A DNA stretch of 64,000 nt from Macrostomum lignano (GCA_002269645.1 NIVC01002440.1:109484-173483); one strand, 5' to 3'. Counted from the stretch's first letter, positions 34,425 through 64,000 are shown. Made by a program: numbers and translations. Notes: generated by a model not told the origin, from the letters alone.

Positions 34425-34812
34425 GCCCCCACTGAGCAGTCAGATCCCCAGCTCATCCCACTGTCAGCAGTCAGATCCCCAGCTCATCCCACTGTGAGCA
34501 GTCAGATCCCCAGCTCATCCCACTGTGAGCAGTCAGATCCCCAGCTCACCCACTGTGAGCAGTCAGATCCCCAGCTCACCCACTGTGAGCAGTCAGATCC
34601 CCAGCTCATCCCACTGTGAGCAGTCAGATCCCCAGCTCATCCCACTGTGAGCAGTCAGATCCCCAGCTCATCCCACTGTGGGCAGTCAGATCCCCAGCTC
34701 ATCCCACTGTGAGCAGTCAGATCCCCAGCTCATCCCACTGTGAGCAGTCAGATCCCCAGCTCATCCCACTGTGAGCAGTCAGATCCCCAGCTCATCCCAC
34801 TGTGAGCAGTCA
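34425..34812. repeat. 31-bp minisatellite between LYRM7 and NF-YC
   Basis: Unit cagtcagatccccagctcatcccactgtgag. Confidence 0.97.
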
Positions 34813-34841
34813 GCCGCAGCTGCCCTGCCCGCACACTGCAG

Positions 34842-36059: not shown

Positions 36060-36129
36060 GGCAGCAGCTTTCGGCTGCACAGCCTGTTGGGGTCCGATCT
36101 GTGACTGCGTGCTGCTCGCTGTTGGGCTG

Positions 36130-44000: not shown

Positions 44001-46083
44001 TGGTGGACAAGGTCAGCCAAGCTCTAAAGACCATGCAAGCAAATGCTGCTGCCAGTGTTGACTTGATACCCCCAAGTAGAGGTCGGACGGGATCCCGATC
44101 CCGAAATCTCGGGATCCCGAGGAAAATTGAATTCCCGCGGGACCAGAATCCCGACCCTGAAAAACTCGAGATTCGGGAACAGGTCTTTTGATTAATAATT
44201 TATAGAATTAGTGATTACTTGAAGGTATTTTGCTTTAACTTGTACTCGTTACATTATTTACTTTGTTGGTTACAAAACTTCATATCAATTTCGTTGTGTT
44301 TTACTTCTTGATCTTGACAATCTTTTCTCAATTTTGTTTAACTTTACATGGACAATACACTAAAAGACCTGATCCCGATTCCCGAATCCTGATCCCAATC
44401 CCAAGAAAAAAATTATTCCTGATCCCGATCCCGCCCGAAGATTTCAATCCCGTCCGACCTCTACCCCCAAGGGTCTTAAAGCTTTCAGAACTGACTCTAG
44501 CAATTACCAGCTTGCTTAACAAGCACTGTGTTCTTGGAGGCAACGCCAAAGCCTACGCCCCTGCTCTATGGCACATTTCGAAGATAGTTTCTATTCCAAA
44601 GAAGGGCACCTCTACTAGCCTGGACAATAAGCATAGCATAGCATAGAATATACTGCGGCCTAGCTACTTAATGCAGTGCTGCGCAACTGCCTTCTGCCTA
44701 GGCTAAATCTGCTGCTTCTTAGCTGGCAAAGTGGTTTCAGACCAGGCAGGTCTATAACTGAGCAGGTTGCAACCATCCACTGCATCATTGAAGCCTATAA
44801 GATGCACCAGTGTTTCATCTCAATTGATTTTGTCAACTTCCACAAAGCATTCAACTTAGTTGACAGACCTACACTTCTATGGATTCTGTCCTACTATGGC
44901 ATTCCTTCTGAACCTGTAGCTGCTATGATGGACTTGTACAGTAATTCAAGAGCATTTGTTCAGTTGAGCAATGGCCCCATTAAAGAATTTAGCACAACTT
45001 CTGGCATCCTTCAGGGTGACACACTGGCTCCACTACTATTCATTGTTGTGGTAGACTATGTTCTTCGCCAATGCCTGCATGAAGATGATGGCTATGTGCT
45101 AATCTCATGCCAAAGCTCCCAATATCCTGCTATCTTACTGCTTGCTCTTGCCTATGCTGATGACATTGCTCTTCTATGTTGCAATCCAGCTGCTGCCCAA
45201 TGGGCTCTGTTTAGACTCTACAAGAGGGCACCTAAGTTGGCTTGGTGATCAATGCATCTAAGACTGATGTACTCCACGTGGGCATTGCAATTATCCCTGC
45301 ACTAGCTCTTCTAAATGGAGAAGTTGTCAAGGTGTGCAAGGACTTCCGCTACCTTGGCTCCCTTGTCTTGAGCCCTGACACCATTGTCTCTGACAGGAGG
45401 ACTCAGGCCTAGCATGCAACACACATGCTCAGGAGTGTCTTCAATTCAACCACTTGCGATGACCTAAAGGTTTATGGTCAAGTCAAAACATCAATGATCT
45501 TTAACAAGTTGACAAATAACAAATAACAAAAAGTCCTAAATTTAGCAAGGCTATGCTGCCATGCTTTGCAAGGGCTTTACAAACCCTATTTGAAACTTAG
45601 AGGAATTGTTGTATCAAGTATCAACTGAACCTAATGAAACCATTTGGGAATATCCTATTATAGATTTCCCTCTAGGCCTACTATAGTGCATAGGCCTAAA
45701 GCTTTTGCTGTTTGTTGGCAATTTGACCATAGACAAAGTCAAAATATTAAAAAAATTAATGAATGGAACTTGACAATTGCCTAAAATTCTAATATAGAGC
45801 CTACAATGGACCTGAAAAGTAAAAAATGGACAACATAAAGTATCTAATGTATAGAACATTTTGCTAGATAATTGAGGCAGAGCTGGCTTATGGCGTAGGC
45901 CATAGCTGTTAGCATATAAAAGACCAAAATGTTGTAATGCAAGTTTTGTTGCAACACAAAAAGGTCATTTATTGAAGCTATTGACATTATTTTTATTAAG
46001 CTTATTTTATTCTCAAATACAATAAAACTAGGCCTAGCTGAGATCATTTCTACTTACACTGCAATGACAAAATCGGAAATCAT
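41041..46083 (-). CDS. SMIM7: Small integral membrane protein 7, 3 exons (46058-46083, 42316-42357, 41041-41203), 76 aa
   Basis: Joined MISDFVIAVTLVINACAILNFKLRDEKQHQFEFEDASRASFGDKTREFLRSLRYFRVFIGLWNIFVILLMLTVFSS* matches recalled human SMIM7; two phase-2 introns with GTAAGT donors. Confidence 0.92.
41225..42175. repeat. 28-31-bp minisatellite filling SMIM7 intron 2
   Basis: Unit gtgagttgggtggcattggagcaccagcagt and variants. Confidence 0.97.
43363..45472. mobile_element. Decayed RTE/RTEX-like non-LTR retrotransposon with internal inversion (3' part on minus 43363-about 43840; RT on plus about 43830-45472)
   Basis: Plus strand: QSGFRPGRS, FVNFHKAFNLVDR, GILQGDTLAPLLFIVVVDY, LAYADDIALL, FRYLGS. 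Minus strand: AIEPILLYGIE...LLGHCLR. Stops and frameshifts are present. Confidence 0.88.
44077..44463. mobile_element. 387-bp non-autonomous hAT-type MITE inserted in the LINE
   Basis: Perfect 17-bp TIRs tagaggtcggacgggat / atcccgtccgacctcta; 8-bp TSD cccccaag at 44069-44076 and 44464-44471; subterminal gatcccg repeats. Confidence 0.93.
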
Positions 46084-47373: not shown

Positions 47374-50300
47374 ATGGATAAAAATTTCCTTTCAAAAAAG
47401 GCGCCTGCCAGGAGTCAGGTGTCAAAGCAGGCTCCGCCGCAGCTGCTACAGAAGCCTCCACCGCTGCCTGAGATTCAGCAGCAACAGAAGCAGCAGCCGC
47501 CACCGCCACTGCAGCAGCAGCAGCAGCAGCAGCAGCAAAAAGTATCACAACCCCGCAGGCCATTAAAACGATTGCCAAGCGTGGCCGGGCCACTCGACAG
47601 AGCCGGGAGCCCAGCCTACAGCATGTCGTCTTTCGGAGTTGAGGATAAATATGGCGGCCTGTTTGGGAGCGATGATGACGACATTTTGAATGAGCAGGAG
47701 CTGCGTTCAGCGGAGGCTTCGCCGCAGCGTTCGCCCAGGTTTGAATCGCCAACCGGGTCGGTTGAGCCGCTGCGAAAGGCCGCCAAGTCGGAGGTCGTCG
47801 CTGACGTGTTCGAACGGTTCAGACTGAGAGACGGCTTGCTGGCGGTAAGATGGATGATCGCCCCGAGAACACTACGATCCAGAATTTTCTTGGAGTTCCC
47901 TAAATGTACAAAATATTTGTTACATTTCTTTCTTGAAACTCTTGAACTTTGCAGAGAAAGTTAGAAAACATTGCGGTCGAAGACTCCACGGTGTTTTTCA
48001 GCTCGGACGGAGCCGCTCCGAGGAGCGAAAGAATGCCGGTTTGGTCCAGCCTGCTGACCGACCTCACCCTCAAGCACCTTTCTGCGGCGCTGGTAGGCAG
48101 ATTCTCATAAATATTTTTCATTTGACAAGCTAAACTTATGAAAAATTCAACAACAATTCTTATCTGATGCTGTAACCCCGATTCCTTGCAGGCCATGAAG
48201 GCCGAGAAGGCTGCAGCCGATCGCTTTCGCCTATCGTTCAGGGGCGAAAGTCACATCACGGACGAGGGAATTCGCTGGCTCTGTGAAACTCTCAAGGGCG
48301 GAGATGCGAGTCGGGCTAAGGTGAGAGCGATAGGTGCAGGCATCAGTCAGTGAGTAGTGGCTAAGGTGAGAGCGATGGGTGCAGGCATCAGTGAGTGAGC
48401 AGTGGCTAAGGTGAGAGCGATGGGTGCAGGCATCAGTCAGTGAGCAGTGGCTAAGGTGAGAGCGATGGGTGCAGGCATCAGTCAGTGAGCAGTGGCTAAG
48501 GTGAGAGCGATGGGTGCAGGCATCAGTCACGGAATGGCAAAGAAACCAGCTGCCTTCAATTGCTTTGATTGCAGACCCTAACGGTGGATGCGGACATCCG
48601 CCAGTGCCCCGGACTCACTGCTAACTCCGTCCATCTGCTGCTCAACACATTCGGCTCCAAATCGACAGTTCGCAGCGATCTGCTGTCCGGCATTCCGGAC
48701 AGCCCGGCCGAGCTGCAGCCGGATCTGTCCGCCGCTCTGTCAGTGTCCAGCCTGCTGTTCCTGACGCCGCCGGACCTGCAGTACAGCCCGCTGCGCACCG
48801 TGAAGGAGTGCCGCCTCAGGCCGGCTGTGCGGGGAACGGCAGCGGACTCGCAATTCATGGAGGCCGGCGGGCTGCTCAAAGTGGCTGCGGTTGAGCTGTG
48901 CCTGTCGGTGAGCGTACTCCTGCGTTTTATCAACTCCAAAAAATGGCTTGAAAAAAAACGTTTAATTATTTTAACAAGGATGCCCAACATATGAATGTTT
49001 GTCCTCCGCCGAGGGGCTCTCCCAGAGCGGAAAAACATGAAAGAATTGGGATTTCCCGTGAGCTTACTCTGTCACCGTCTCCATTTGAAAGGTTGCAGCT
49101 CATTTAAATCCCCACGCTTCTTTGTTTGTCCCCTTGGAGAGCCCGGAATAGGCCAGATCAGCGGGATTTCAGCATCAGTTCTGCTGTCTGTCTGCAGAAT
49201 CAAAAGTGCATGAAATTTCACAGCCCCTTCGCAACCCCGCGCGCAGGCCTACAACACGCAGTTCTTCACCAGCCAGCCGGATCAGGTTGTGATCGCCGTG
49301 GAAAACGATTTTGACAGCGCCGTCGCCCACGTGACCGCCTGTCTGACCAACTTCGTGTCTCGGGTGAGTTCTTGAGTACTTGAGTACGTGAGTTCTTGAG
49401 CCAACTGATAAGCACTGAGCAAGATTGCAACTGAAATCCCACATCCACTACTCATAGGAGAACCCAGTGCTCAGGAAGAGGACCGCCCCCAAGCCGCGCC
49501 TGGTCCTGCAGCAGCCCGCCGCCGCCATTCCCGTTGTCAGTCGAGAGGCGCCAGTGCAGCTGAAGACCGCCTCGAAATTGAACTTGATTACAAAGAAAAA
49601 GCAGACTAAGAAGGTCAAAAAGTCCAAAGGCGCCGTGTTTGATGAGGCACAGATGGACCTGGAGATGCTGCAGTCCGAATACCAAGAAGGGGATCAGCTC
49701 CAGGAGCCCGCGGTGCTGCAAACAACCGAAGCAGGCCTATGCGCTGCAGCCAAAGTGGAGCAGGGCTGGGTGTAAGTGGAGCAGGGCTGGGTGTAGGTGG
49801 AGCAGGGCTGGGTGTAAGTGGAGCAGGGCTGGGTGTAAGTGGAGCAGGGCTTGGTGTCAAAGTGGAGCAGGGCTGGGTGTAGGTGGAGCAGGGCTGGGTG
49901 TAAGTGGAGCAGGGCTGGGTGTAAGTGGAGCAGGGCTGGGTGTAAGTGGAGCAGGGCTGGGTGTAAGTGGAGCAGGGCTGGGTGTCAGTGGAGCAGGGCT
50001 GGGTGTCAGTGGAGCAGGGCTGGGTGTAAGTGGAGCAGGGCTGGGTGTCAGTGGAGCAGGGCTGGGTGTCAGTGGAGCAGGGCTGGGTGTCAATGGAGCA
50101 GGGCTGGGTGTCAGTGGAGCAGGGCTGAGTGTAAGTGGAGCAGGGCTGGGTGTCAGTGGAGCAGGGCTGGGTTTCAGTGGAGCAGGGCTGGGTGTCAGTG
50201 GAGCAGGGCTGAGTGTAAGTGGGTGCAGTGACTTGACCATCCCAAGCCTTCCTATTCCAGGCTACCCCTGCTAAACCGAGGCGGCGCCTTTCTGAGCCGG

Positions 50301-53300
50301 CAGCCGCTGAAGCAGACTCCCCTGTGCGGCTTCTCAGTGCAGAGCGCGAGCCGCTCTTCCTTCAGCGCTGGGATTGGGAAAATTTCGGCAAAATTCTTTG
50401 ACAATCCTCAACTGGCGCAGCTGCAGGAGCAGCTCGAGCAGTCAGCGGGAGTTCTGCTGCTCTTCAGCAGCAAAAATCCGAATCAATAGTAAGCAGCCGG
50501 TGCGAATTAACTTTGTTGCAAACGATGCAGGCTTGCAGTCAGTTGCTTTTCCCCATCCGCAGCATGCTGACCTGCAGCTACGCCAGGCCCGATGGCGGCA
50601 GAACGAAGACCCAGAGCATCCCCATCGCAGCCGCCGCAGAGTTCCAATTCGCCGTAGAAATCTCGGACCCGATCGACAGCAAGGACGCCTGCCACGTCAG
50701 CGTTTTCGTTAACCAAGACTTGCTTCAAGACTTTCAAGTCCGAACGAGCGCTCTGTTCGGCGATGCGTCCGAGTTGACGCACGGCTTCGTCTCCTGGGCC
50801 GCCGCGGACGTGTCCGAGAAGATGGGCTTCTGCCAGATCGACAAGGCGCTGACCAACGAGGACATTAAGAAGCACCTGGACCAGCTGAAGATGACAGGAG
50901 ACGTGGAAGTCAGCGACGAGGGCGCGCATCGGACGCGATTTCGCATCCTTTGCCGCAAAATCGACCATCAGCGAGGAGGCGCTGACCGGCTTCGCTCGGC
51001 CGTCCAAGATGCCATGAAGGCCAACGCGGCAGCGCTGGAAGCAGCATCTCTGGCTGCAGCAGAGTCGGCTGCGAGGACGCAGGGCTTCGAAGCGGAGCGG
51101 CGCGCAGCGGAGTCGCTGGTGGCAGCGGAACGAGTGCAGCGGTTCCTGCGGACTCGCTTCGACCAAGAGCTGGACATCTTCGACGCCGAGGCCGACGGTG
51201 GAGGGGGCGAGGGCGGACTTCGAGACCTGCGCCAGGCGCTCATAGAGACTGCGGTTGCCGCCTTCTCCGCGCTGGCGCCTGCGGCCTCAGCGCACGCGGC
51301 GACCACAGAAGTCGTCGTCGCTGCGTGCCGAAAGTTGGCGAGCAAGGAGGCTGGCGGCCGGCTGGTTTCCGTGGACCAGCTGGCGGGCAACACGGAGATC
51401 GACCGGACCTTCTTGACTCACGATTTGGACTGGCTGCACCAGAGGGTGAGTCGCCTCAGCTTGTGATGCAAAAATTCTCGGCACTACACGAACAATAAGC
51501 GCATATTGAATTTTTTCAGGGCATCATCATCTATCTGAAGCGCCTCCGCATCGTGGTAGCCGACCCGCCATGGTTTTTCACCCTGCTGGAGTCGCTGCCA
51601 TTTGAGCCGCCCCTGTTTGCCGGGCCGCTGCTGCCCGGACTGAGCCCCGGGGCCGGAGTGTGGAGCCAGCTGGGTCTGGACAAGTCGCTGCAGCAGGCCG
51701 GCTTGTCCGTGCAGGAGGTGAGCGGATCATCTACTCAACCACTTTCTCAGTCACCAGCTCAAATAACTAGCTCAATCAGCTACTCAATCACTTGCTCAAT
51801 CAGCTGCTCAATCACTTGCTCAATCAGCTGCTCAATCACTTGCTCAATCAGCTGCTCAATCACTTGCTCAAATAACTAGCCCAATCACTTGCTCAATCAC
51901 TTGCTCAATCACCTGCTCAATCACTTGCTCAATCACTTGCTCAATCAGCTGCTCAATCACTTGCTCAATCACTTGCTCAATCACCTGCTCAATCACCTGC
52001 TCAATAACTTGCTCAATCACTGGCTCAACCACTTGCTCAATCAATTAGCTCAATCACCTGCTCAATCACCTGCTCAATCACCTGCTCAATCACCTGCTCA
52101 ATAACTTGCTCAATCACTGGCTCAACCACTTGCTCAATCAATTAGCTCAATCACCTGCTCAATCACCTGCTCAATCACCTGCTCAATCACTTGCTCAATC
52201 ACTTGCTCACCACTTGCTCACCACTTGCTCAATCACATGCTCAACCACCTGCTTAATCACCTGCTCAATCACCTGCTCAATCACTTGCTCAATCACTTGC
52301 TCACCACTTGCTCAATCAATTAGCTCAATCACATGCTCAACCACCTGCTTAATCATCATTGCAGATGGACCACCTCATCAGCATATTCAAGGACTCCGGA
52401 GCCCTGCTAGAGGTGCTTCCAATTCGAGAGTCGCCTGCCGATGCCAAGCTGTTCTACACCAACATGTTCTGTGCCAACGCCAGGCAGCTGGACTGGCCTG
52501 TTAAGTCCGCCAAGGACGCCGAAGGCCTGGGTCTCGCGGCCGTCCACCGCTGGTACCGCGGCATCAACCTGAGTGCGGACCGAATCCTGCCGGCCCTCAG
52601 CTCGCTGACGTCGCATCTCGGCTCCCTCTGCTGCCTGTCTGCCCGCGGCTTCGTCAGGTGTCTGTGGGGAGCGGAGGTGGCGGTGCACTTTGACGATGAG
52701 GAGCGGCTGCTGAGGCTGACTGCCTACCAGCCTGCTGGAGCAAGCTCTGGTGGAGCGGCTGAGGCCACTCAGCGGATGCTGTGGTCCGCACTGCACCTGT
52801 TCACGGACTGCGCTGACTGCCTCATGATGAGGCACGGCGTCATCGCGGAGACTGCGCCATCGAATGGCGAACCGGGTAGGCAGCGGGACTGCTCCGGGGT
52901 TTTGGGAGGGTTTCAAGAAATTCTGAGTCCATGGTTGATTGCATGCAGTGGGAATTCTGAGTCCATGGATGATTGCATGCAGTGGGAATTCTGAGTCCAT
53001 GGTTGATTGCATGCAGTGGGAATTCTGAGTCCATGGATGATTGCATGCAGTGGGAATTCTGAGTCCATGGTTGATTGCATGCAGTGGGAATTCTGAGTCC
53101 ATGGATGATTGCATGCAGTGGGAATTCCGAGTCCATGGTTGATTGCATGCAGTGGGAATTCCGAGTCCATGGTTGATTGCATGCAGTGGGAATTCCGAGT
53201 CCATGGATGATTGCATGCAGTGGGAATTCTGAGTCCATGGTTGATTGCATGCAGTGGGAATTCCGAGTCCATGGTTGATTGCATGCAGTGGGAATTCCGA

Positions 53301-56300
53301 GTCCATGGTTGATTGCATGCAGTGGGAATTCCGAGTCCATGGATGATTGCATGCAGTGGGAATTCTGAGTCCATGGATGATTGCATGCAGTGGGAATTCC
53401 GAGTCCATGGTTGATTGCATGCAGTGGGAATTCTGAGTCCATGGATGATTGCATGCTTACACACGCGTGAACGCCTGTCTTCATTTACTTTGAGGCTCAT
53501 GAATCAAAATTTTTATGGGCTTGTCCGATTCACGTAAGATGCGCATCCGTGTGCATGCCCTGAGCTAGTTCTGAGGCCACAGTTGACCCACAGGCAGAGA
53601 GAAGGCCAGCAGTTATGGTCGCTTCCCTGGTCCCTGAGCACGCGCACGGATTAGTACAAAAGCGCACCATCATTGATTGTGCAGCGGCCCTGACTTTCCT
53701 GCGCTGAGGGTCTCCTGTCGCCCAAAAAGCCACCCTCACGAACTACCCGGTAACAAACTGGCCAGCGCAACCGCCGTTCCCCGCCTGAGCAGAGAACTGC
53801 TCCGTCCACAGCGAGCACTGCTGGGAGCTGCAGCAGCTGGACGGCGAGCCGCAGCAGTCGGTCTGCTCGCTGTGCGGCAGCTGCTCGGTCGGCGGCTCCG
53901 ACTGCGCCTTCAACCGGATCGACTCCGGCGCTCCCGGCCGCTGCCTCTGCGGCGCCCTCGGCGGCGCCAGCTGTGACTCCTGCGGCGTCTGCGGCCGCTG
54001 CGCCGCGCGGCTCTGGGCGGTGGGCAGTGATGTGCGGCCCAGCCGTGTCCTGCCGGGCTACATCGACGATGGCGACATTGCGGACAGCAGCCGGTGCGTG
54101 CGGCTCTGCCCCAGCGCCCCGCTGCAGTCGGTGCTGGCGCCTGAGGTCAGCTTCAGCATCAGCCCCAGTGGTTCCCAGCAGCAGCAGCTCAGCGTCCTGC
54201 TTTGGGAGTGAGTTGACGACTAATTTTTTGGGGCTGTATAGTTAAAAAAAGTCTCATTGAAAAGTTTTGCAAAGTGTTGGTGCTTCAGAATGGCTTCTTG
54301 GCAACAATCAGTCATGAATCAAAACTGATCAGAGAGTTATCAGAATACGAAAACTTTTTGGGGTTTAGGAAGATGAAGCAGAACTTGACTCGATGACCTC
54401 TGCTCGCTTCTGCTATTTTAGAAAGCATACGCCGAGGTACTTGGAGGTTTATCCAAAGCTATCCGAAAGCCAGACAGGTGAGAAAATGAAAACTTTTTAT
54501 AATGATATTTAGAAGCCTGAATATGCGTTTGCTGCACCGTGCCCGCAGATGCGGTTTTCTCCACAAGCCAGGTGCTGCTGGAGGAGCCGATTACTGTCAC
54601 CTTCCGGCTGTCCGCTGTTAATGTGAGCGCGGCTTGCTGTTTTAGCTCTTGCCGATAAATGGTGATTGGGATCCCCACTGGTTGGCCTTCCAGCCCGTTG
54701 ACGATGTAATGGACGGCGCACTCAGCGTGGACCGCAGGTTCAGCTTCGCTCTGAGGTCCTTCTGCTCGGTGTGGCAGGAGACGGGCGTCGCGTTCTACTG
54801 GTTCAACACGCTGCAGGAATCTGCTGGGCTGGCCGCCTCCAACATATTCGTTCCCGTGGCCACCCTGATCGGGGAGAGACGCCTGACCAGGAGCAGCAGT
54901 TCGTTTGAGATTTGTAAGTTGCCGGACTGCGGAACTCAATCGAAACCAGAACCACTGGCGTACGTCGCTTAACTGTAAGTGACTTCATTGCAGGCATTGA
55001 GAACAAGGGCGTTAAAGGAAATATTTCCATTGGAGTCGTGCCGGCCGACTTTCCCGTGATGGCCCAGCCCGGCACGCTGCCTGGCTCTGTTGGTTACAGC
55101 GGCGTGGACGGCAGGTGATAGAGCTCCTGATTGATGGTGCTAGACTAAGACAACTCAGTTGAAGCTGAGCCGGACTCAAAGCCAATGCATTGCAAATGCA
55201 AAATATCCACGCCATCTTGACACAAACCGCAGACTGCTCACAGCTGGCGGAGCGGCAGAGCCGGACCCGAAGTTCAAGTTCTCCGGCCCGAAGCGGCCCC
55301 GGGCTGCCACGTGCGCTGCCAGCTGCGGTTCGTGGGCCCCAGCCGGGCGCGGGTCCTGTTCTCGGTGGACCAGCGGGGCAGCGGCTCGTTCGAGGACTGC
55401 CACGTCAGCGAGCCGGTGGACGTCCCGCCCACGGGGCTGTTCCCCTGCGTTACTATGCAGTCGCCCAGGGAGGCTGTGCGGCTGACCAACCGAATTCCCT
55501 GGCTGCCAGCGACCTACGCTGAGCAGCTCCCGGTCGGTGTGACGGAAGACTTCCCGGATGACCCTGCCGACACAGCCGCTGTTGCGAAGATTTTCCCCGA
55601 AGACAGCCGCCTGCTCTGCCTGAAGGAGAAAACCGAGATGCAGCCCAGCTTCTCAGCTGTAGTCGCTCTGCAGCTGCTGGCCCCCGGGCAGACGGAGTTG
55701 AAGGTGAGAAACCGTTATAAAAACAATTATTGAGGCACTGTTCACCTTCCGCAGTAATCTGTACGAGCTCACGGAATTCCAGGTGACTTCATCCCGTCAC
55801 GTGATCTGCAACTCTGCCACGGTGGACCCGGGTGCCGCAGTGTCAGGCGGCGAGCAGGATCAGAAGCGGACGGCGTACTTCGCATTGTCGCCCAAAGATC
55901 AGGAGAGAATCGTGATTCTCAACGTGCTCATTTTGTACCCAAAAGAGAGCAGCAAAGACCCGGATTCGAGTCCCGACGCTCAGTCGCTGGAGTTTTCGGA
56001 ATTCCTGCGCAAAGAGTGCAGTCTGGAGATCTCGCTGGACAACAAGTCGGCGGGGCACCAGGAGAAGCGGCTGACCTTCGATCTGCAGCCGGAGATGTCG
56101 CGGCACAACTCGGCACCTCTCGTGGCTCTTCAGGACAGGGAGGAGAACAGAATGAAGCTGGGCGGCTCGTGCGACCTGTTGGAGGTGCTGGAGAATGGAG
56201 TTACCGTCCGAAAGGTGCTCGTGCCGCGCAGGAACTACGGCTGGGTTTTCAACGCTTCGGCGGGTGCCGCCGTCTGCGTCAGCGCTTCGAATTTCCCGGT

Positions 56301-59300
56301 GGGTTTTTAATGAATATCTTCTTCTGTTTCCAACGGCACAGTGAAACTCATAGACCGCTCCAACTCCAGGCCGTGAACTACTCGAGAGAGCTCAGCCCTG
56401 GCGACTGGCTGAGACTCGAAGCCGGGAAGTCCGGAAAACCCGGCGGCGAACTCAGCAGGGTCGTCAAGGCCGACTCCAAGTCGGTTACTCTGCAACCGGC
56501 AGACGCCGCACTGGCTGCAGTGACGGTTGAAATCAGTGCTGGCAGCTTCAGAGCTCCCGACCGGCTGGACAGAGCGAACTTCAGCTGTAAGCGCGTAGCA
56601 TTAGAAATAGCATTAGAAATAGCATTAGAAATAGCATTAGAAATACTCCGCTGCAGGTGGACAGCTGCGCTAACGGCCTGCTTAACTCGCGCACCACTTC
56701 AGCCTCAGCGATCAGCGATCCTGCGCTACCGATACCCAATTTCCCCAGCCCGAACGTCCTGCCCCGCTGGAATCAGACCAGCGACCTGACGGACGACTCC
56801 ATCCTCTACGGCCAGCCCTGCCGCTGCGTCGGCTTCCGAGGGCCCGCCGGCTTCGGCCGCAGTGTGCTGGCGTCTCTGGCGAAGAAGGCCGGCGTTGGCC
56901 ACGGCTTCCTGTGGGTTTTCCTGCCCGAACTCACCAGCGAAGAGGGCCGCCTGTTGTGCCAGCCCAGCATCCTGGATGTAGCAGATTCTGGCAAACTGAA
57001 AGCGCACCTGCTGTGCAACAGCGGTTAGTAAACACCGTGCTCAGTGGATTCCGTCTGAGTTCCTTACTGGGACCATTTTCACTAAATCATTGACTCCCTG
57101 CTTAACTAACACGCAGGTTCCGTGACGGACGTGCACCTGGTGGACTCTGCAGGAGTGAAGCACCCACTGCCATCAGCTCTGGACTGCCACCTGACAGCAC
57201 AGGCTGCCGTCAGGGCTTTGATGCAGCACAGGGTAAGGGGCTGAATACCAGCTGATGCTGCCGCTCCACCCACCATCAGCTGATGCTGCCACCCCACCCA
57301 CCCTCAGCTGATGCTGCCACCCCACCCTATCCTTAGCTGATACCCCACTCACCCTCAGCTGATGCCGCCACCCCACCCACCCTCAGCTGATGCTGCCACC
57401 CCACCCACCCTCAGCTGATGCTGCCACCCCACTCACCCTCAGCTGATGCCGCCACCCCACCCACCCTCAGCTGATGCTGCCACCCCACCCACCCTCAGCT
57501 GATGCCGCCACCCCACTCACCCTCAGCTGATGCTGCCACCCCACCCATCCTCAGCTGATGCCGCCACCCCACCCACCCTCAGCTGATGCCGCCACCCCAC
57601 TCACCCTCAGCTGATGCTGCCACCCCACCCCCCCTCAGCTGATGCTGCCACCCCACCCCCACCCTCAGCTGATGCTGCCACCCCACCCCCACCCTCAGCT
57701 GATGCTGCCACCCAACCCCCACCCTCAGCTGATGCTGCCACCCCACCCCCACCCTCAGCTGATGCTGCCACCCCACCCCCACCCTCAGCTGATGCTGCCA
57801 TGCCACGAGCTGCTCACCGGCCCCGGCCATTGCCGCTCAGTTGCGGAGGCTGTCGTGAAGCGGCTGCTGTTGCTCGGAGCCGCCCTCTCGCACTGGCGCA
57901 GCCTCTTCGCCGCATCAGCCGCTGAGCAGCCCGATGGACTCGAAGACCTCAAGAAGCGCCTGACTGCGGAGTTCACTCAGCCCCCTGGCGGGCCGCTGGT
58001 TCTGCAGGCGCAGCAGCAGCAGGGCCAGGACCTGCAGCCCGTGTGCAGGGCTCACCAGCTGGCTGCCGGCAGCCCGACCCTCATTGACGAGCTGGTCGGC
58101 TCCGCAGCTGCAGGCGAGGGAGAAGCGGCTGTGGCGGCCACTCTGGCCACTTTCGGCAGCTGCGTCCGCTCGGCCCTCATCAGCTCGCGCCTCATCAGCA
58201 GCGCCTCCTGCCTGACGGGCCTCACCGGATTAGAGACTCTCCATCTGCACAGGATGGAGAAGATGCAGAGTCTGGACAAAAGCTGGCCGATGCAGCGCCT
58301 GCGAAGCCTCACGATAACCCAGTCCGACCTGCTGTCAATTGACTGCAACGCTCCTAATCTGCAGAGCCTCACCATCAGCATCGCGAAGGTCTCACAGCTG
58401 CCAAACACCTGCAGCACCAAGCTCGAGTCTCTGACGCTTGACAGGTGCCTCATCACTGCCCTTCCAGCATCCATCGGACAGCTAGACAGACTAACCATGC
58501 TGCACCTCCTGCAGCTGCCGATCCGCACTCTGCCGAAGGAGTTCGCCAACCTGCGCTCGCTGCAGGAGCTCGTCATCGACGGGATTGCTTGGCCTGACAG
58601 AGTGGCGGACCAGATGGATGAGCACGACAGCGGCGCGGGAACAGCATCGCCTTTGGATGCGACTTACCTGCGCAACCCTGGCGTCACACTGGCGGGCCTG
58701 GAGCCCGTGCCGCCGGAGCAGCAGTTCTTCAGCCTGCTCATCACGAGGAGCAAGCCAAACGGATCGCGGACTGCCGCGGCCTTCACTACATGCTGACTGA
58801 CGTGCCGCGCATGGGGCTGGAGAGCGTGGACGATGATGAAACCGGCGGGATCCCGCCCTGCCTGTTCGAGCTGACCAACCTCAGGGAGCTGCGACTTTCG
58901 CATCAGGTAAGCGGGATATGTGGCTTCTTAAATACTCCTTTGAGACTGTTTTTTTTAGATAAACTTTATCAGTGGCCATTGGAGTGCACAAGCGTCACAT
59001 CTCACTGCAGGCAATCCATCAAGTTCCTGACAAGATAAAAAGCTTGAAAAAGCTGCAAAGGCTGGTCCTCGATCACAATCCGAGGCTGAAGTCCCTGTCG
59101 CCCTGTCTGTCTGAGCTGCCACAACTGAGTCACGTGGACGTGTCCAGGTGCCCGTCTCTGCAGACTCCGCCTGTGGAGGTTGCCAAGAGGGGCTCGAGCG
59201 CTATGCTCAGCTACCTCAAATTTCTCGCTTCCGACCAAGTGGAGTGCAAGAGAACAAAGCTGATGTTTGTCGGACTGGGTAAGTTTCCGGGTCTCTCCTG

Positions 59301-62300
59301 GCCGGAGCATGTGGTACCCGGTCAGAACAGTGTGCATAGTTAATCAGCTTCTTACCGCTTCCAGGCGGAGTTGGGAAGACCAGCTTGCTGCGCGCCCTGC
59401 GCAGTACCACCGGGACCACCAGCGTCATCGGTGCCGAGGAGATCACCGACGGCATCGACATTGGCGACTGGCAAATCGACATCGGCGACGGCAGTCCGCC
59501 GCTGCACTTCAGCACGTGGGACTTTGCTGGACAGCGGGTGTACTACAACACCCACCAGTTCTTCCTCACACACAGGGCTGTCTACCTGCTGCTGTACACA
59601 GTGAGGACTGGCTACGAGCACGCCGGCCTAAACTTCTGGCTCAGCTCCATCGCCAGCCACGCACCGAACGCTCCGATTCTGGTGGTGGGCACCCATGCTG
59701 ATCAGGTGAGAAGTGCTTTAAGTCACCTAACACCTTACTGTGCCTACAATGGAGGTTACAAATATACTGTTTCAGGTGGAGAAACCGGACAAGATTCCCA
59801 TGGAGACGTTCAAATCGCGATATCCTCAGATCTGCGGATTTCACATCATTTCATCGCACAGCGGTAAGCAGTTACAGCAAGTCTTTCTGCCCAGGTGGCT
59901 TCCCCTCCTAAGCAGAACACCGCATTCCCCACCACCGCAGGCATGGGCATCGGCGACCTCCGCAAGCAGCTGGTTCAGGTCGCCCTCCAGCAGCCGTACA
60001 TGAGCGAGCGGCTGCCGCGGATCTTCCTGGACTTTGAAGACCGCCTGATCGAGAAACGAACCCGGGACCACGTGAAAATTCTGGACTGGCAGGAAGTGGC
60101 CGACCTGGCCCAGTCGCAGGGCCTCTACGAGGACAAGCACGTGAGGCAAGCGGTCAGCTTTCTGAACGACATCGGCTCGGTGCAGTACTTCGACACGGAC
60201 TACCTCAGACACAAAGTGGTCATCAACCCGAAGTGGATTGTGGATGTCATGGCGTGCGTTGTCAGCGTGAAGAACTCGCCCATTCAGGTGAGCTTCTCCG
60301 TCACAGTAGCTTGTACATTATCAGCATGGCATGAACCTGAGCCGAACTTTAACAACCCATCAAACTGCAGAACGGCCAGCTGAAAAGATCCGACATTCCA
60401 GCGATCTGGAGCAAGTTCGATCCAGCACTTCACGAGTGGCTGCTGAAGCTTACAGAGGCCTTCGACTTAACGTACGCGATGAAGGAGGACTGCAACATCG
60501 TGCCCTGCTTGCTTCCAGAGGACGTGCCGGAGGTACCTTTGATTCTGACGAGCTTGTGTTTTGTTCAAGATAGATAGATGGATAGAGACACAAAAACTAG
60601 TGAGTTCTTGCGCACACGCGCTCAAGAAACAGGTAGAAGGGGCAGGCAACTGCGGTCTGGGGCTGAGACTCTGGGCCTACAAGTCTGTCACAAAACAGTC
60701 TGTCAGTGTCACAGTACGCCCTTGGCCACGGCGCTTCCGCTACGTCGGCTGGTGCAGGTGCTTTGCTCAAACAACTAGACTGAAGCCATTGCCCATAGTT
60801 CATGCAGGAAAACCGAGATCCATTGTGAATTAGCGATTTAATTCGAACACCTTCGCGCAGTACTCGTTCCCGCAAGAGGCGGACGGCGAGGGCAACACGC
60901 TGGCGAGGTTCATCTACCAGTTCGACTACCTACCAGCCGGGCTGTTCAACCGGGCTCAGGTCCGGCTGTTCGAGTTCACCGACAGCAACACCATCTGGAA
61001 GCGCGGCTCGCTGCTCCGAAAGGACGCCCACATCGCCGTCATCACCATGGACGAGAGACAGCGCCTGATCGCGACTGTGTTCGGACCGAGGCCCGAGAAC
61101 GTACTCTTCATGATTAACGACGTGTTCGACAGTCTCATCAAGGAGACGTTCCACGGCGTCCACTATGAAGAGATTCTGCCCTGTCCCGAGTGCCTGAATT
61201 CCTCATCGGGTGACAGTGAGCGCAGCGTCATCCGAGTTGCCATGATTCGCAAGGCCAGCAGCCGTCAGGTGTCATTCCTGCAGTGCCCGTTCGAGTTTCA
61301 CATCCTAAACCTGAGCCAGCTGCTCGCAAGCATCCGCCCAGAAAGTCTGACGGAGTTCGACCATCAGCTTGAACAGAGTCTGCTGCGGCTTCGCAGAGCT
61401 CGACTGGAGATGAGCAGAGATGTGTGTCTGCTGTTTCTTGCGGATGATTTTCAGAAAGACGGCAAGGACAGAGGACAAACTTGCCCTGAGGCTGTGGCCA
61501 AGAAGCTGGAGGCAGAAGGGCTCAGCTGGTAAGCCATTGCGGAATACTCTGGTGCACCTCGCTTCTGTTCACCTTGCTTATCCCAGATGCTGTTCACTTT
61601 TCAGCTACCCGCCGTACCCCGAGCAGCAGGAGGACAAGCAGCTGCACATGAGCGACTGTAGCGCTGTGCTCGTGTTCCTCACAAAGTCCTTCGCTCAGAC
61701 AAGGCCTGCCTGAACTCGCTGTTCAGCGCCAAGAACAACCTGCGCAAGAAGCTCGTCTACCTCAGCGTTGGGGCGGACAAGTCGTGGCGGGACTGCACCG
61801 AGCTCGCCTTCCTCGTCGGCACAGACAAGTATATTGATCTGACGGATGCCAAAAAGTCCGTCTACGAAGGGCAGCTCGCAGAGGTCATCAAGGACGTCTC
61901 GGCTGCGGTTGAAACATCCAATCAAAAACCCAGTGGCGATGACTCTCGCGACAAGGACGTCTTTGTTTCCTACTGCTGGGCAAATTCTCACGACGCCGTG
62001 GCGAAGGGAACCCGAAACGGAGCTCTTGGCTGCGAGGACAGTGACCCGCGTCGGCTCAGGGAGAGATTGGAAGCAGAGGGGATTCGATGCTGGCTCGACG
62101 TCAAGGACACTGGAACCGTAGGTTTCGCAGATATTAATTACACTATAAATCGATGAATGTGTCAGTAAAGCTTTGAAGTGATGGTATTTTATCTCCAATG
62201 CTCGTAAACATCTCAAGATCTCGACGTGTAACGTGAAGAAGAGCATTCACACATTCATTAAAGCTCATTGTATCTCTGATATCAATCCTTAGATTATAGG

Positions 62301-64000
62301 GCTGTTAGTAGTTATCGTGTCAGTCTGTAAAAGGCATGTTGTGGGAATTTGTTAGAACAGTAAAAATGGAGCAGATAGACACGAAGCTCTCCCTGTCCGG
62401 TTTCACTTGCAGCGCAGCCTATTCGAGGACATCAGCTCGGGCCTCGGCCGGTGCCCGCTAGTCCTGGCTTTTGTCAGCGACGAGTACCAGCGCAGCGCCA
62501 ACTGCATGATGGAGTTTCGCTTCGCGGCAAAGAACCTGCGCAAGCCGATTGTGACTGTCGTGGTGGGCCAGACGCAGGCCTTCAAGACCCAGGAGCTGGG
62601 CATGCTCAGCCTGGGCTACGAGGAGTTCGACTTTCGCAAGGATGTTCCGGCTTTGGAATTTAAAAGACTGGTTGCCGGAATCAAAAGTCTGCTGGCCAAA
62701 GAGGCCGAAAAAAGATCGGCAAACGTGCCGCTGATGAAACGAAAGACCACCGTTGCTATGCCGTTGCCAAGCCAGCCCGGCCTGTTTCGAGAGGAGGCCG
62801 AGCTTGCGCAGCGCCGGTTTCTCAAGCAGTTCAGCCACAGCGACCTGCCGCGGCTGCTTGTGCCGGACTTCAGCGACGTCACCGACTTCAGTGACGAGAG
62901 CCGGAGCAAGGATTCAGACGGCGGCAAGCTGGAAGAATTGGTTGGTTTACCTACGAACCTACCAAAATTGCAGTAATGTGCAGTGTGATCCATTGATTGA
63001 ATTTTATACAGCTTTTCCTTCCACCGCAAATCCACAGGTGCTGATCAGAGTGTTTTGCGAGAATCAGCGGGTGAGTTGCATGGTATGGCAGATTAAAGCG
63101 CAGGCGGTTCTTAGCAGGGCTTTGCGGGACACCGGGACAACTTCCGATCCATGGCCTGGAATGCTTTAACATCATCGCGCTTCTCACACTTACGCTTCTC
63201 AATGTCCCCACTATTAAGAATAGATTGATTATAGTGTCGAAATGCATGATAGGTTTGGTTCCAAAACGCAATGTATCCTTGAAACACTACAGGGCTGGCA
63301 CGCCCACGGACCGGCCGTGAGCCTCGCGACGCCAGCAAGACGGGCCGGGAAAACCTGCTGTCTGCGCGCCTCAGTGTACCTGCTAAGGATCTGCTCGCTG
63401 CTGCAGGCCAGCGGCATTCGGTTGAACTGCCTCGAGGGAATCCAAGCCGAGGAGTTCCTGCAGGCAGTCCGTGTGGAGGCTGCGGTGTCGCCGAAGTCGT
63501 TCATCGACGCCTACCGAACGGTGCAGCAGCTGTACTCGGATGCCACCAGTGAGTGGGGCGGGTGTCGATTGCTCAAAGTCCGTTTGCTGGTTTTTTTAAA
63601 CTCAGTGCTCCGTGAATGCATTTCTATGCGTTACTTGGTCGCAAGTTCATGCGCAACCATGAATATAGAACTCGATGACAGTCAACGGTTTTCGTCACTG
63701 AACATAAATTTCAGCTTCTACAGTGTAGTTCTGTGTCCAGAACTGAGATTCGAACGCGCAATAGCCCAGGGCATTCGTTTCAGAGAGTTCCTACTCTTCC
63801 TTAGCAGACCACAATAGCAATCCATAAATACAGACCATGTTCGAACTTTTATTGACTGATAGATCATAGGTTTGATTGATCTCCTGTAATGCCGCTCAGC
63901 TCGAAATTTTGTCTGAGTCTCATCCGGTCTTCCGTGTGCATGTTCCAGAGGGCGAGCAGCGCCACTCCGGGCTGTCCAAGTGTGCGCTGGGCAGCGGCAA
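47374..64000 (+). CDS. Giant multi-exon Roco-family protein (LRR-like, degenerate ROC/COR, Cys module, SPRY, LRR, ROC-COR, TIR x2); continues past the window
   Basis: The exons I traced join in phase through GT-AG introns. ROC motifs [28 protein letters not shown] and VVGTHAD at 59245-59700; [16 protein letters not shown]...VVINPKW and YLPAGLFNR; TIR DVFVSY...CWLD...FVSDEY...CMMEF. 1-nt slips near 58745 and 61698. Confidence 0.85.
48313..48530. repeat. 45-bp tandem repeat, 5 copies, each containing a splice donor
   Basis: GCTAAG|GTGAGA at 48321, 48366, 48411, 48456 and 48501. Confidence 0.95.
49754..50222. repeat. 21-bp minisatellite starting inside an exon end
   Basis: Unit gtggagcagggctgggtgt(aa/ca). 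Confidence 0.97.
51745..52350. repeat. 12-bp-based intronic minisatellite
   Basis: Unit ctcaatcac(t/c)tg. Confidence 0.95.
52920..53456. repeat. 34-bp intronic minisatellite
   Basis: Unit ttctgagtccatggttgattgcatgcagtgggaa. Confidence 0.97.
56597..56646. repeat. 12-bp repeat, 4 copies
   Basis: Unit agcattagaaat. Confidence 0.9.
57250..57800. repeat. 28/30-bp intronic minisatellite ending in the exon start
   Basis: Unit cagctgatgctgccaccccacccaccct; the last five units are 30 bp. Confidence 0.97.

What the first reader, a model, noticed from the sequence alone, without database searches (positions are those of the whole stretch)
47374..64000. Giant double-Roco protein with SPRY and tandem TIR: candidate innate-immune or cell-death sensor
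Seen in order in one phase-consistent gene: Q/P-rich start, LRR-like ITDEGIRWL (about 48270), degenerate ROC-like and COR-like region (48575-52875), Cys module (53793-54020), SPRY (54700-55510) and a further beta-rich region, LRRs (58200-59220), intact ROC (59245-59990), COR (to about 61350), TIR (61420-61870), TIR (61960-62700), and more C-terminal exons. No kinase domain is visible in the window. Established: LRR-ROC-COR-TIR proteins occur in invertebrates. I do not know this full arrangement with a second N-terminal Roco module from any described protein. The immune role is inference.
Basis: partly seen in the sequence, partly recalled or inferred. Interest (0 to 1): 0.8.

Follow-up and report, generated by a model that had tools for sequence, protein, structure and literature searches.

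The report
Giant flatworm Roco–SPRY–TIR gene
This is one very large gene of the flatworm Macrostomum lignano that joins a GTP-switch module (Roc-COR) to sensor-like repeats and two TIR signalling domains; it belongs to an unstudied but already catalogued family shared with molluscs and a ribbon worm, and this copy carries three single-base frameshifts.

Summary
Window 47374 to 64000 (+) holds 32 exons of one gene. The window end cuts it off; about 168 aa are missing.

Domain order: Q/P-rich start, weakly conserved N-terminal region, coiled coil, divergent COR domain with no detectable Roc, 10-Cys module, SPRY, unassigned region, LRR, intact Roc, COR-A, COR-B, TIR1 (degenerate), TIR2, and a conserved C-terminal domain. 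There is no kinase and no TM helix.

The organism is Macrostomum lignano. A roughly 97% identical sister copy is in GenBank (PAA58707.1, 2913 aa), annotated from RNA-seq. Collinear giant proteins exist in a scallop, a freshwater mussel and a nemertean. The architecture is therefore catalogued, although I found no paper describing it.

- The gene is not phase-consistent. Three 1-bp deletions relative to the sister copy (about 55288, 58744, 61693) break the ORF. These are either assembly errors or a decaying duplicate.
- "Double Roco" is half true. The N-terminal COR is confirmed (hhalign E 5e-6; AlphaFold model matches Roco/LRRK COR structures). No N-terminal Roc could be shown.
- The immune or cell-death role remains inference.

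The parts
47374..47844 (+). Exon 1: start codon and Q/P-rich low-complexity N-terminus
   Evidence: First ATG after an in-frame stop; donor GCG|GTAAGA. The start MDKNFLSKK aligns with the N-terminus of paralogue P0125.
47955..49363 (+). Exons 2-5 (47955-48092, 48192-48320, 48575-48907, 49247-49363): weakly conserved N-terminal region. It holds the [11 protein letters not shown] motif (48249-48281) and the [11 protein letters not shown] block.
   Evidence: Matches paralogue P0125. Only a weak collinear hhalign to the Tubulanus/Sinanodonta N-termini (E 0.04). No Pfam hit. No similarity to Roc. AF2 model pLDDT 36.
49458..51289 (+). Exons 6-8a (49458-49771, 50261-50440, 50563-): Lys-rich linker, beta-rich segment (50606-50965) and Ala-rich coiled-coil-like segment (50978-51289)
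   Evidence: Exons supported by P0184/P0122/P0183 at 91-99% identity. The stretch directly upstream of the COR-like domain does not align to Roc.
51302..52841 (+). N-terminal divergent COR domain (COR-A-like plus COR-B-like) with no detectable Roc. It spans the end of exon 8, exon 9 (51520-51717) and exon 10 (52365-52875).
   Evidence: hhalign versus true Roc-COR: prob 85.8%, E 5.3e-6, mapping onto COR-A and the start of COR-B. AF2 model pLDDT 78.7. Foldseek top hits are 3dpt COR of C. tepidum Roco (E 1e-6, TM 0.53), LRRK2 and LRRK1.
53858..54016 (+). 10-Cys module (C-x2-C-x2-C-x6-C-x12-C-x-C-x7-C-x2-C-x2-C-x2-C), presumably zinc-binding, in exon 11 (53793-54207)
   Evidence: All 10 Cys and an upstream His are invariant in 5 homologues. 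No Pfam or PDB match.
54727..55502 (+). SPRY domain across exons 14-16 (54694-54913, 54994-55114, 55233-55703)
   Evidence: Pfam SPRY E 0.0075 here, significant at the aligned site in orthologues. phmmer hits multi-SPRY proteins.
55288..55288 (+). Frameshift 1: 1-bp deletion relative to sister copy L001 (GGCACCGAA to GGC-CCGAA). The unpatched frame stops at about 55483.
55783..57232 (+). Conserved unassigned region after SPRY (exons 55783-56298, 56370-56586, 56703-57023, 57117-57232). It includes the small bridging exon that refutes the two-gene model.
   Evidence: Junctions match P0183 exactly. Orthologue HSPs start at aa 1828-1861 and run through to the end of the protein. No Pfam hit.
57789..59278 (+). 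LRR region: block 1 (58212-58586), degenerate EF-hand-like insert (58710-58816), block 2 (58844-59172). Exons 57789-58906 and 59011-59278.
   Evidence: Pfam LRR_8/LRR_4/LRR_14. Alignment to Haliotis, Patella and Pinctada homologues, which carry a canonical EF-hand here.
58744..58744 (+). Frameshift 2: 1-bp deletion relative to L001 (ATCACCGAGG to ATCA-CGAGG). The unpatched frame stops at 58794-58796.
59248..59987 (+). Roc GTPase domain with intact motifs (GLGGVGKTS, DFAGQ, THAD). Exons 59011-59278, 59365-59705, 59776-59863, 59941-.
   Evidence: Pfam Roc 9e-18. Spliced chain. Closest solved structure is LRRK2, 1.5e-39.
60009..61334 (+). COR-A (60009-60532) and COR-B (60900-61334)
   Evidence: Pfam COR-A 2.8e-15 and 1.6e-7; COR-B 3.6e-28.
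61413..61901 (+). TIR1: divergent, lacking the conserved Glu (ACLNSLF)
   Evidence: Pfam TIR_2 E 0.0026, below the cut-off. Two TIR_2 stretches in scallop orthologue P0137. Conserved in P0002, P0021 and P0015.
61693..61693 (+). Frameshift 3: 1-bp deletion relative to L001 (TTCGGCTCA to TTC-GCTCA) inside a conserved TIR1 motif. The unpatched frame stops at 61708-61710.
61950..62694 (+). TIR2 (exons to 62117 and from 62413). It keeps the Glu of the S..C..E motif (NCMMEF).
   Evidence: Pfam TIR_2 5.5e-14. Weak PDB match to the CRISPR-associated TIR Cat1. The Glu is invariant in all homologues shown.
62794..64000 (+). Conserved C-terminal domain of unknown fold (exons to 62940, 63038-63070, 63293-63548, 63949-64000). 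It is truncated by the window end. A compensated -1/+1 indel pair lies at 63330/63366.
   Evidence: 24 invariant columns in 6 homologues. No Pfam or PDB match. About 168 aa more in P0183, ending in CNIQ.

Best explanation
Window 47374 to 64000 is most of a single Macrostomum lignano gene of at least 32 exons. It encodes about 3,560 aa when the three frameshifts are repaired.

The product is a cytosolic, kinase-less Roco protein of a spiralian family. Its domain order is: N-terminal region, coiled coil, orphan Roc-less COR domain, 10-Cys zinc-type module, SPRY, unassigned region, LRRs (with an EF-hand remnant), Roc, COR-A, COR-B, TIR1, TIR2, and a conserved C-terminal domain. A CaaX-like tail is seen in the sister copy.

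Shown: gene structure, domain identities, conservation, and purifying selection.

Inferred mechanism:
- The LRR and SPRY surfaces bind a ligand or partner.
- The Roc-COR unit acts as a nucleotide-dependent conformational and dimerisation switch, as in LRRK2 and bacterial Roco.
- The extra COR may provide a second dimerisation or intramolecular docking surface.
- The switch controls self-association of the C-terminal TIR pair. TIR2 retains the Glu needed by NAD-cleaving TIRs; TIR1 is a non-catalytic partner.
- The output is TIR-TIR adaptor signalling or NAD+ cleavage, possibly at a membrane.

The copy in this window cannot make the full protein as assembled.
For: Gene structure:
- 32 exons with GT-AG sites give an open 3,392-aa frame after three 1-nt patches.

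Sister copy:
- The exons map at 97-100% aa identity to PAA58707.1, on a collinear locus about 97% identical.
- That annotation derives from genome-guided RNA-seq assembly (PMC5730564).

Selection:
- pN/pS is 0.22 overall and 0.14, 0.27 and 0.22 in the three thirds. pS is about equal to intron divergence.
- 1-bp indels are about 10 times rarer in exons than in short introns.

Orthologues:
- Ylistrum (3222 aa), Tubulanus (3306 aa) and Sinanodonta (2838 and 4435 aa) have SPRY, LRR, Roc, COR-A, COR-B and TIR in the same order. They align collinearly over aa 753-1495 and 1828-3392.

Domains:
- Pfam hits.
- N-terminal COR by hhalign and by AF2 plus Foldseek.
- Roc-COR is closest to LRRK2 and C. tepidum Roco.
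- No TM helix.

Context:
- TIR2 Glu is invariant and TIR1 lacks it.
- TLRs are absent from M. lignano (PMC8609888).
- LRR-Roc-COR with variable effector domains is viewed as a conflict or immune architecture (PMC8195603).
- COR+TIR proteins have been noted in the Aplysia immunome survey (PMC9334734).
Against: - There are no functional data of any kind. No expression, induction or biochemical evidence was available here.
- The conserved Glu also occurs in non-catalytic TLR TIRs (my own knowledge), so NADase activity is open.
- This copy has three ORF-breaking deletions. The sister copy has its own lesions in exon 5. No intact full-length copy was seen in one piece.
- The 5' exons 1-7 are joined to the rest only by overlapping computational models (P0184, P0125) and orthologue collinearity. 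They are not joined by the RNA-seq-based model, which starts inside exon 8.
- The ligand-binding role of LRR and SPRY and the role of the extra COR are pure inference.
Confidence: 0.6

Rival explanations
1. Two adjacent genes: an N-terminal COR-like/Cys/SPRY gene ending at the in-frame stop at 57026-57028, and a separate LRR-Roc-COR-TIR gene starting at ATG 57642.
For: An ATG-initiated ORF starts at 57642. 57030-57780 has low coding potential and a minisatellite. The public annotations split the locus in different ways (P0122 of 498 aa versus P0121 of 2457 aa).
Against: A donor at 57024, a 116-nt exon (57117-57232) and an acceptor at 57788 reproduce PAA58707.1 exactly. The bridging exon has 1 mismatch in 116 nt against 2.7% in introns. 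Orthologue alignments run uninterrupted from aa 1828-1861 to the end. Four orthologues carry SPRY and Roc-COR-TIR in one protein. ATG 57642 lies inside the intronic 28-bp repeat array.
Confidence: 0.06
2. The copy in this window is a decaying duplicate (pseudogene) produced by the recent genome or chromosome duplication of M. lignano. The frameshifts are real and the locus makes no full-length protein.
For: Four 1-bp deletions and one 1-bp insertion in coding exons relative to L001. Three of the deletions each give a premature stop, and the -1/+1 pair at 63330/63366 replaces 12 conserved residues. One of the deletions is not in a homopolymer. M. lignano DV1 assemblies hold 180 Mb of duplicated blocks at least 95% identical (PMC5730564). 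The other copies also show lesions at different places.
Against: pN/pS is 0.22 and exonic 1-bp indels are 10-fold depleted relative to introns, so decay, if real, is very recent. The public assemblies are PacBio-based and such assemblies typically leave 1-bp indel errors (my own knowledge). Two of the three sites are GG or CC dinucleotides. No reads were available to check.
Confidence: 0.4
3. The protein is not an immune or death sensor. It is a housekeeping signalling scaffold, for example in membrane trafficking or the cytoskeleton like LRRK2 and LRRK1, with the TIRs serving only as protein-interaction modules.
For: The closest solved relatives of Roc-COR are LRRK2 and LRRK1. The gene appears to have only a few paralogues in M. 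lignano and 1:1-like orthologues across phyla, rather than a large lineage-specific expansion. It is under purifying rather than diversifying selection. Its neighbours are housekeeping genes.
Against: TIR domains in animals are almost exclusively immune or SARM1-type death signalling modules (established knowledge). LRR-Roc-COR with a variable effector is a recurrent conflict-system layout (PMC8195603). The TIR2 Glu is invariant.
Confidence: 0.3

Closest known systems
Predicted proteins PAA58707.1 / A0A267ECV5 and A0A1I8IUY9 (Macrostomum lignano)
   Same: Near-identical sister or allelic copies: 97-100% per exon, with the same exon structure from exon 8 onward.
   Different: Their models lack the 5' exons and are auto-named 'non-specific serine/threonine protein kinase' without a kinase domain. 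The window copy has three extra frameshifts. L001 has exon-5 lesions.
Uncharacterised giant proteins XP_060065175.1 (Ylistrum balloti), XP_074647641.1 (Tubulanus polymorphus), KAL3880394.1 / KAL3880395.1 (Sinanodonta woodiana)
   Same: Collinear orthologues with COR-like, Cys module, SPRY, LRR(EF-hand), Roc, COR-A, COR-B, TIR, TIR, C-terminal domain and a CaaX-like end.
   Different: 23-38% identity. The mollusc proteins carry extra N-terminal SPRY repeats and a canonical EF-hand. KAL3880395.1 is probably fused to a downstream BTB/Kelch-like gene.
LRRK2 / LRRK1 (human Roco kinases)
   Same: LRR-Roc-COR core; best solved-structure match (1.5e-39). The N-terminal COR model also superposes on their COR.
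   Different: No kinase or WD40 here; the effector position is taken by two TIR domains. This protein has an extra Roc-less COR, a Cys module and a SPRY domain.
Chlorobium tepidum Roco (3dpt, 3dpu, 6hlu) and bacterial LRR-Roc-COR-effector 'AP-GTPase' conflict systems
   Same: LRR-Roc-COR with a variable C-terminal effector. The COR fold is the best structural match for the N-terminal module.
   Different: The bacterial proteins are about 1,000 aa with a single COR and have no SPRY or Cys module.
Aplysia californica ROC/COR-containing TIR proteins (PMC9334734)
   Same: LRR, EF-hand, ROC, COR and TIR combined in a spiralian. Accessory Mbt, NHR and Death domains were reported. They are discussed as possible novel GTPase-linked TIR signalling.
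   Different: They were described only as InterPro cartoons. No orphan COR, Cys module or tandem-TIR analysis was given. Orthology to this gene was not tested here.
MFHAS1/MASL1 (vertebrate kinase-less LRR-Roc-COR protein; from my own knowledge)
   Same: A Roco without a kinase; reported to modulate TLR signalling.
   Different: No TIR, SPRY or second COR, and about 1,050 aa. Not compared here by any tool.
SARM1 and prokaryotic TIR NADases such as Cat1
   Same: A TIR with the conserved Glu. The only PDB sequence hit of TIR2 is Cat1 (E 0.021).
   Different: The similarity is marginal. The regulatory domains are entirely different. Catalysis is untested.

Membership tests
Roco proteins | Roc (Ras-of-complex) GTPase domain with G1, G3 and G4 motifs | tested here: met
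   Pfam Roc 9.1e-18; GLGGVGKTS, DFAGQ and THAD present.
Roco proteins | COR domain immediately C-terminal to Roc | tested here: met
   Pfam COR-A and COR-B (3.6e-28); contiguous with Roc in the spliced model.
Roco proteins | GTP binding and hydrolysis | not testable with these tools
   Needs a biochemical assay.
'Double Roco' (second complete Roc-COR module at the N-terminus) | Second COR domain | tested here: met
   hhalign prob 85.8%, E 5.3e-6. The AF2 model matches the 3dpt COR at E 1e-6 and TM 0.53, and also LRRK2 and LRRK1. Pfam and the PDB HMM search do not see it.
'Double Roco' (second complete Roc-COR module at the N-terminus) | Second Roc/G domain preceding that COR | tested here: not met
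   hhalign of both candidate stretches versus Roc-COR gives prob 0.15% and 11% (the latter only over the COR-A start). Orthologues have a single Roc Pfam stretch. The AF2 model of the candidate is unusable at pLDDT 36.
LRRK-type Roco kinases | Protein kinase domain C-terminal to COR | tested here: not met
   No Pkinase hit in the window pieces, in P0121/P0183 or in the orthologues.
TIR-domain proteins | TIR fold recognised by a profile | tested here: met
   TIR2 TIR_2 5.5e-14. TIR1 is only E 0.0026, below the cut-off, but is seen as a second TIR_2 stretch in P0137.
NAD-cleaving TIRs (SARM1, plant or bacterial type) | Conserved catalytic Glu | tested here: inconclusive
   The Glu is present and invariant in TIR2 (NCMMEF) and absent in TIR1. 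It also occurs in non-catalytic TIRs, so this is necessary but not sufficient.
NAD-cleaving TIRs (SARM1, plant or bacterial type) | NADase activity | not testable with these tools
   Needs an enzyme assay.
Toll-like receptors | Transmembrane helix between ectodomain LRRs and the TIR | tested here: not met
   No 19-aa window has Kyte-Doolittle hydropathy above 1.6 (maximum 1.51). Roc-COR lies between the LRRs and the TIRs.
SPRY-domain proteins | SPRY profile match | tested here: met
   Weak in this copy (E 0.0075) but significant at the aligned site in three orthologues. phmmer E 4e-68 to a six-SPRY Mya arenaria protein.
TRIM-like (RING/B-box plus coiled coil plus SPRY) | RING or B-box zinc finger | tested here: not met
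   The Cys module has no Pfam or PDB match and its spacing is different.
STAND / NLR receptors | NACHT or NB-ARC NTPase | tested here: not met
   No such Pfam hit in any segment or orthologue.

The most novel reading that the evidence does not exclude
In TLR-less flatworms, and in some molluscs and nemerteans, this family could be a previously unrecognised class of cytosolic, membrane-tethered innate immune receptor. In this reading, a Roc-less 'pseudo-Roco' COR together with the Zn module and SPRY forms a sensor or autoinhibitory arm. That arm docks on the C-terminal Roc-COR as an intramolecular pseudo-dimer. Ligand binding releases it and drives assembly of a TIR1-TIR2 heterotypic NADase or signalling platform.
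Probability: 0.12. Interest if true: 0.75.

Novelty: new variant of a known kind. Interest (0 to 1): 0.45.

Why it matters
Roco proteins are studied mostly through LRRK2, and animal TIR signalling mostly through TLR/MyD88 and SARM1. This is a conserved spiralian protein that wires an intact Roc-COR switch directly to a tandem TIR output. It also carries an extra orphan COR domain, an unclassified 10-Cys module and a SPRY domain. The host animal has no TLRs.

If the TIR pair is an effector controlled by the GTPase, the family would be a tractable example of GTP-gated TIR signalling in animals, because M. lignano has transgenesis and RNAi. It would also be a natural experiment on what a COR domain does without its Roc.

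For annotation, three practical points follow:
- Current database names ('serine/threonine protein kinase') are wrong.
- The existing gene models are truncated or split.
- Different assembled copies carry different ORF-breaking lesions.

Tried and rejected
- Pfam on raw stop-to-stop pieces and on a first spliced draft of the N-terminal half gave nothing.
- My first 15-exon draft ended at a stop at 57026 and suggested two genes. It was rejected after mapping PAA58707.1 and finding the bridging exon 57117-57232.
- I first read the 61529 junction as a further frameshift. This was an off-by-one error: the donor is at 61528|GT and the phases match.
- An HMM of the N-terminal COR-like alignment against PDB sequences found nothing. 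Profile-profile comparison and structure prediction were needed.
- Tests for an N-terminal Roc gave no support: hhalign of the 48.6-49.4 kb region and of the 170 aa directly upstream of the COR-like domain, and an AF2 model (pLDDT 36, not searched further).
- Homology of the first ~400 aa to orthologue N-termini is only E 0.04.
- The Cys module and the C-terminal domain have no PDB sequence match.
- The first homologue search returned only proteins under 905 aa and no self hit. The exhaustive representative search found the real relatives.
- Literature searches for ROCO+TIR+SPRY and for Macrostomum+TIR/LRRK found no description of this architecture.

Full report
**What is in the sequence.**
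The region is eukaryotic and full of introns, so the bacterial-style ORF list was of no use. Stop-to-stop translation and a codon-usage scan showed coding segments on the + strand switching frame every few hundred bases from 47374 to the window end.

Pfam on the raw pieces confirmed the C-terminal half at once:
- LRRs
- Roc (9e-18)
- COR-A
- COR-B (3.6e-28)
- a TIR_2 match split by an intron

The N-terminal half gave no Pfam hit, either as raw pieces or as a first spliced draft.

**Identity of the locus.**
An exhaustive HMMER search with the N-terminal half found two near-identical predicted proteins (94-98%) and a set of distant relatives. Cluster look-up named the organism as Macrostomum lignano. 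The close relatives are:
- A0A1I8IUY9 (2457 aa)
- PAA58707.1 (2913 aa, BOX15_Mlig008399g1, contig NIVC01002342.1)
- A0A1I8GHK8 / A0A1I8GAJ4 (5' fragments)
- the paralogues A0A1I8FIN7 and A0A1I8IYN6, which UniProt calls 'COR domain-containing protein'

PAA58707.1 maps to the window exon by exon at 97-100% identity. Its locus (L001) is collinear with the window from 42.9 kb onward at about 95-98% DNA identity. The window is therefore a sister copy, either a duplicate or a divergent haplotype, of an annotated gene.

According to the genome paper, the GenBank annotation of that assembly comes from a genome-guided RNA-seq transcriptome. The same paper reports that the DV1 assemblies contain 180 Mb of duplicated blocks at least 95% identical and 15% simple/tandem repeats (PMC5730564).

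**Gene model.**
I used PAA58707.1, A0A1I8GAJ4 and the paralogue P0125 as guides and required GT-AG junctions. This gave 32 exons from ATG 47374 to the window end. With three single-N patches the frame is open for 3,392 aa. PAA58707.1 continues for about 168 aa more and ends in CNIQ.

The junction that decides between one gene and two lies between 57023 and 57789. A donor at 57024, a 116-nt exon at 57117-57232 and an acceptor at 57788 reproduce the GenBank protein exactly.

Independent support for a single gene:
- BLASTP alignments of the window protein to the mussel and nemertean orthologues start at aa 1828-1861, upstream of this junction, and run without a break to the end.
- Between the window and L001, pN/pS is 0.22 overall and 0.14, 0.27 and 0.22 for exons 47374-50440, 50563-57232 and 57789-64000. 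pS (0.023) is about equal to intron divergence (0.027).
- One-base indels are about ten times rarer in exons than in short introns.

All parts therefore behave as constrained coding sequence.

**The frame is not intact.**
It is not. Relative to L001 the window has 1-bp deletions at three sites:
- about 55288, in the SPRY exon
- about 58744, in the LRR / EF-hand-remnant exon
- about 61693, inside a conserved TIR1 motif

Each leads to a stop within 15-200 nt. A compensated -1/+1 pair at 63330/63366 replaces 12 residues that are conserved in orthologues.

The sister copy has its own damage in exon 5: a 1-bp insertion giving a stop, a 6-bp deletion and a ~155-bp deletion. This explains why its annotated protein starts at a Met inside exon 8. 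The ML2-derived model P0121 shows further frame anomalies elsewhere.

I cannot tell assembly indel errors from real decay of duplicates without reads. The low pN/pS and the exon-specific depletion of indels show that any decay is recent.

**Domains, from N to C** (coordinates).
- *aa 1-157.* Q/P-rich.
- *aa 158-560.* This part matches the M. lignano paralogue but matches the orthologue N-termini only weakly (hhalign E 0.04). It holds the single [11 protein letters not shown] motif and the [11 protein letters not shown] block. Neither has Pfam support. hhalign to a true Roc-COR profile gives prob 0.15%, and the AlphaFold model was unusable (pLDDT 36).
- *aa 576-803.* A beta-rich segment and an Ala-rich helical segment. 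The spacing from a conserved strand to the COR-A-like motif is 157-173 aa in five homologues. This stretch does not align to Roc.
- *aa 808-1080.* A genuine though very divergent COR domain. Profile-profile comparison with true Roc-COR gives prob 85.8%, E 5.3e-6, over 210 columns that map onto COR-A and the first part of COR-B. A template-free AlphaFold model (pLDDT 78.7, pTM 0.71) has as its best PDB matches the COR domain of C. tepidum Roco (3dpt, E 1e-6, TM 0.53), the RocCOR tandem, LRRK2 and LRRK1.
- *aa 1114-1166.* A module with ten invariant Cys, and no Pfam or PDB relative.
- *aa 1285-1477.* SPRY.
- *aa 1545-1934.* Conserved but unassigned.
- *C-terminal half.* Two LRR blocks flanking an EF-hand that is canonical in molluscs and degenerate here. 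Then an intact Roc, COR-A, COR-B, TIR1, TIR2 and a roughly 170-aa C-terminal domain with 24 invariant columns but no known relative.

There is no kinase domain and no TM helix. TIR2 keeps the Glu of the S..C..E motif in every homologue shown, and TIR1 lacks it in every one.

**Relatives.**
The same order is present in XP_060065175.1 (Ylistrum balloti, 3222 aa), XP_074647641.1 (Tubulanus polymorphus, 3306 aa) and KAL3880394.1 / KAL3880395.1 (Sinanodonta woodiana). That order is COR-like, Cys module, SPRY, LRR, Roc, COR-A, COR-B, TIR(s), C-terminal domain and a CaaX-like end. Fragments occur in Mytilus.

In all of them Pfam sees only one Roc and one COR pair. The orphan COR is thus equally cryptic everywhere, and none retains a recognisable second Roc.

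Shorter or partial Roc-COR-TIR-TIR proteins occur in gastropods, an annelid, rotifers and the nematode Plectus.

In the literature available to me:
- COR+TIR proteins with accessory EF-hand, Mbt, NHR and Death domains were noted in the Aplysia immunome survey (PMC9334734).
- LRR-Roc('AP-GTPase')-COR with variable effectors has been interpreted as a conflict-system layout (PMC8195603).
- No paper describing this full architecture was found.
- M. lignano and other flatworms lack TLRs (PMC8609888).

**How it probably works.**
What is shown is a cytosolic multidomain protein with an intact-looking Roc-COR switch, putative binding modules (LRR, SPRY) upstream and a TIR pair downstream. It is conserved under purifying selection.

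What is inferred, from established knowledge of Roco proteins (nucleotide-dependent conformational change and COR-mediated dimerisation) and of TIR domains (signalling or NAD+ cleavage on self-association), is this. Ligand or partner binding is coupled through Roc-COR to assembly of the TIR pair. TIR2 is the possible catalytic or signalling unit and TIR1 its degenerate partner. The CaaX-like tail, seen only in the sister copy and orthologues, suggests a membrane location. The orphan COR may add a dimerisation or intramolecular docking surface.

An immune or death-sensor role is plausible but untested. A housekeeping scaffold role is a serious rival, given the low copy number, cross-phylum orthology and purifying selection.

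**Verdict.**
Its 'double Roco' claim is half right: a second COR is present, but no second Roc can be demonstrated. Its 'phase-consistent' claim is wrong for this copy. Its novelty claim is weakened because the architecture is already in public protein sets, although these are unnamed, mis-named or split, and undescribed in print.

I rate it a new variant of a known kind, of moderate interest.

Noticed in passing
window 48314-48529, 49753-50222, 51734-52355, 52919-53456, 56596-56645, 57249-57800: Six introns of the gene carry minisatellites (units of 45, 21, 12, 34, 12 and 28 bp). Each begins at or within about 45 bp of the 5' splice site. At 48314 and 49753 the repeat unit includes the exon end plus the GT donor, so the donor site is iterated. 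Several of these arrays create long spurious ORFs, for example the ATG ORF at 57642.
   Followed up: partly
L001 8762-9038 (NIVC01002342.1), equivalent to window 49458-49771: The annotated sister copy has a 1-bp insertion (creating a stop), a 6-bp deletion and a ~155-bp deletion in exon 5. This probably explains why PAA58707.1 starts at an internal Met. Every assembled copy seen has ORF-breaking lesions at different positions.
   Followed up: partly
beyond the window end; P0183 C-terminus and orthologues P0137, P0143, P0147: The proteins end in CNIQ, CSIQ, CNIS and CSIQ. This is a conserved CaaX-like box suggesting prenylation and membrane anchoring.
   Followed up: no
public records A0A1I8IUY9, A0A267ECV5, A0ABD3X2D0: These records are automatically named 'non-specific serine/threonine protein kinase', although no kinase domain is detectable. 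Two 5' fragments of the same gene are named 'Helicase ATP-binding' and 'SWIB domain-containing'. These are likely annotation artefacts.
   Followed up: partly
window 58710-58816: The insert between the two LRR blocks is a canonical EF-hand in the mollusc homologues (D-x-N-x-N/S-G-x-L-D) but has lost the calcium-binding loop in the flatworm protein.
   Followed up: partly
window 43382-45245: A non-LTR retrotransposon remnant lies about 2 kb upstream of the gene start (RVT_1, E 3e-16 for 44664-45245 +). It is also present upstream of the sister copy, since the L001 alignment starts at 42923.
   Followed up: partly
window 10213-12075 (-), 13392-15116 (-), 19086-19583 (-), 24867-25355 (-), 33691-34119 (+), 34806-35279 (+): The neighbouring genes look like housekeeping genes: FG nucleoporin, CWC25 splicing factor, Snapin/Pallidin, a DnaJ protein, a LYR-motif protein and a histone-fold (NF-Y/NC2-like) protein.
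   Followed up: partly
window 1-42000: There are strong GC contrasts (34-38% in 26-34 kb and 42-48 kb, up to 73% at 10-12 kb). Many long coding-looking minisatellite arrays occur, for example 2791-3633, 4626-5455, 6016-6578, 8815-9800, 13631-14444, 20688-21585, 36105-36792 and 41044-42029. This is consistent with the repeat-rich M. lignano genome.
   Followed up: no
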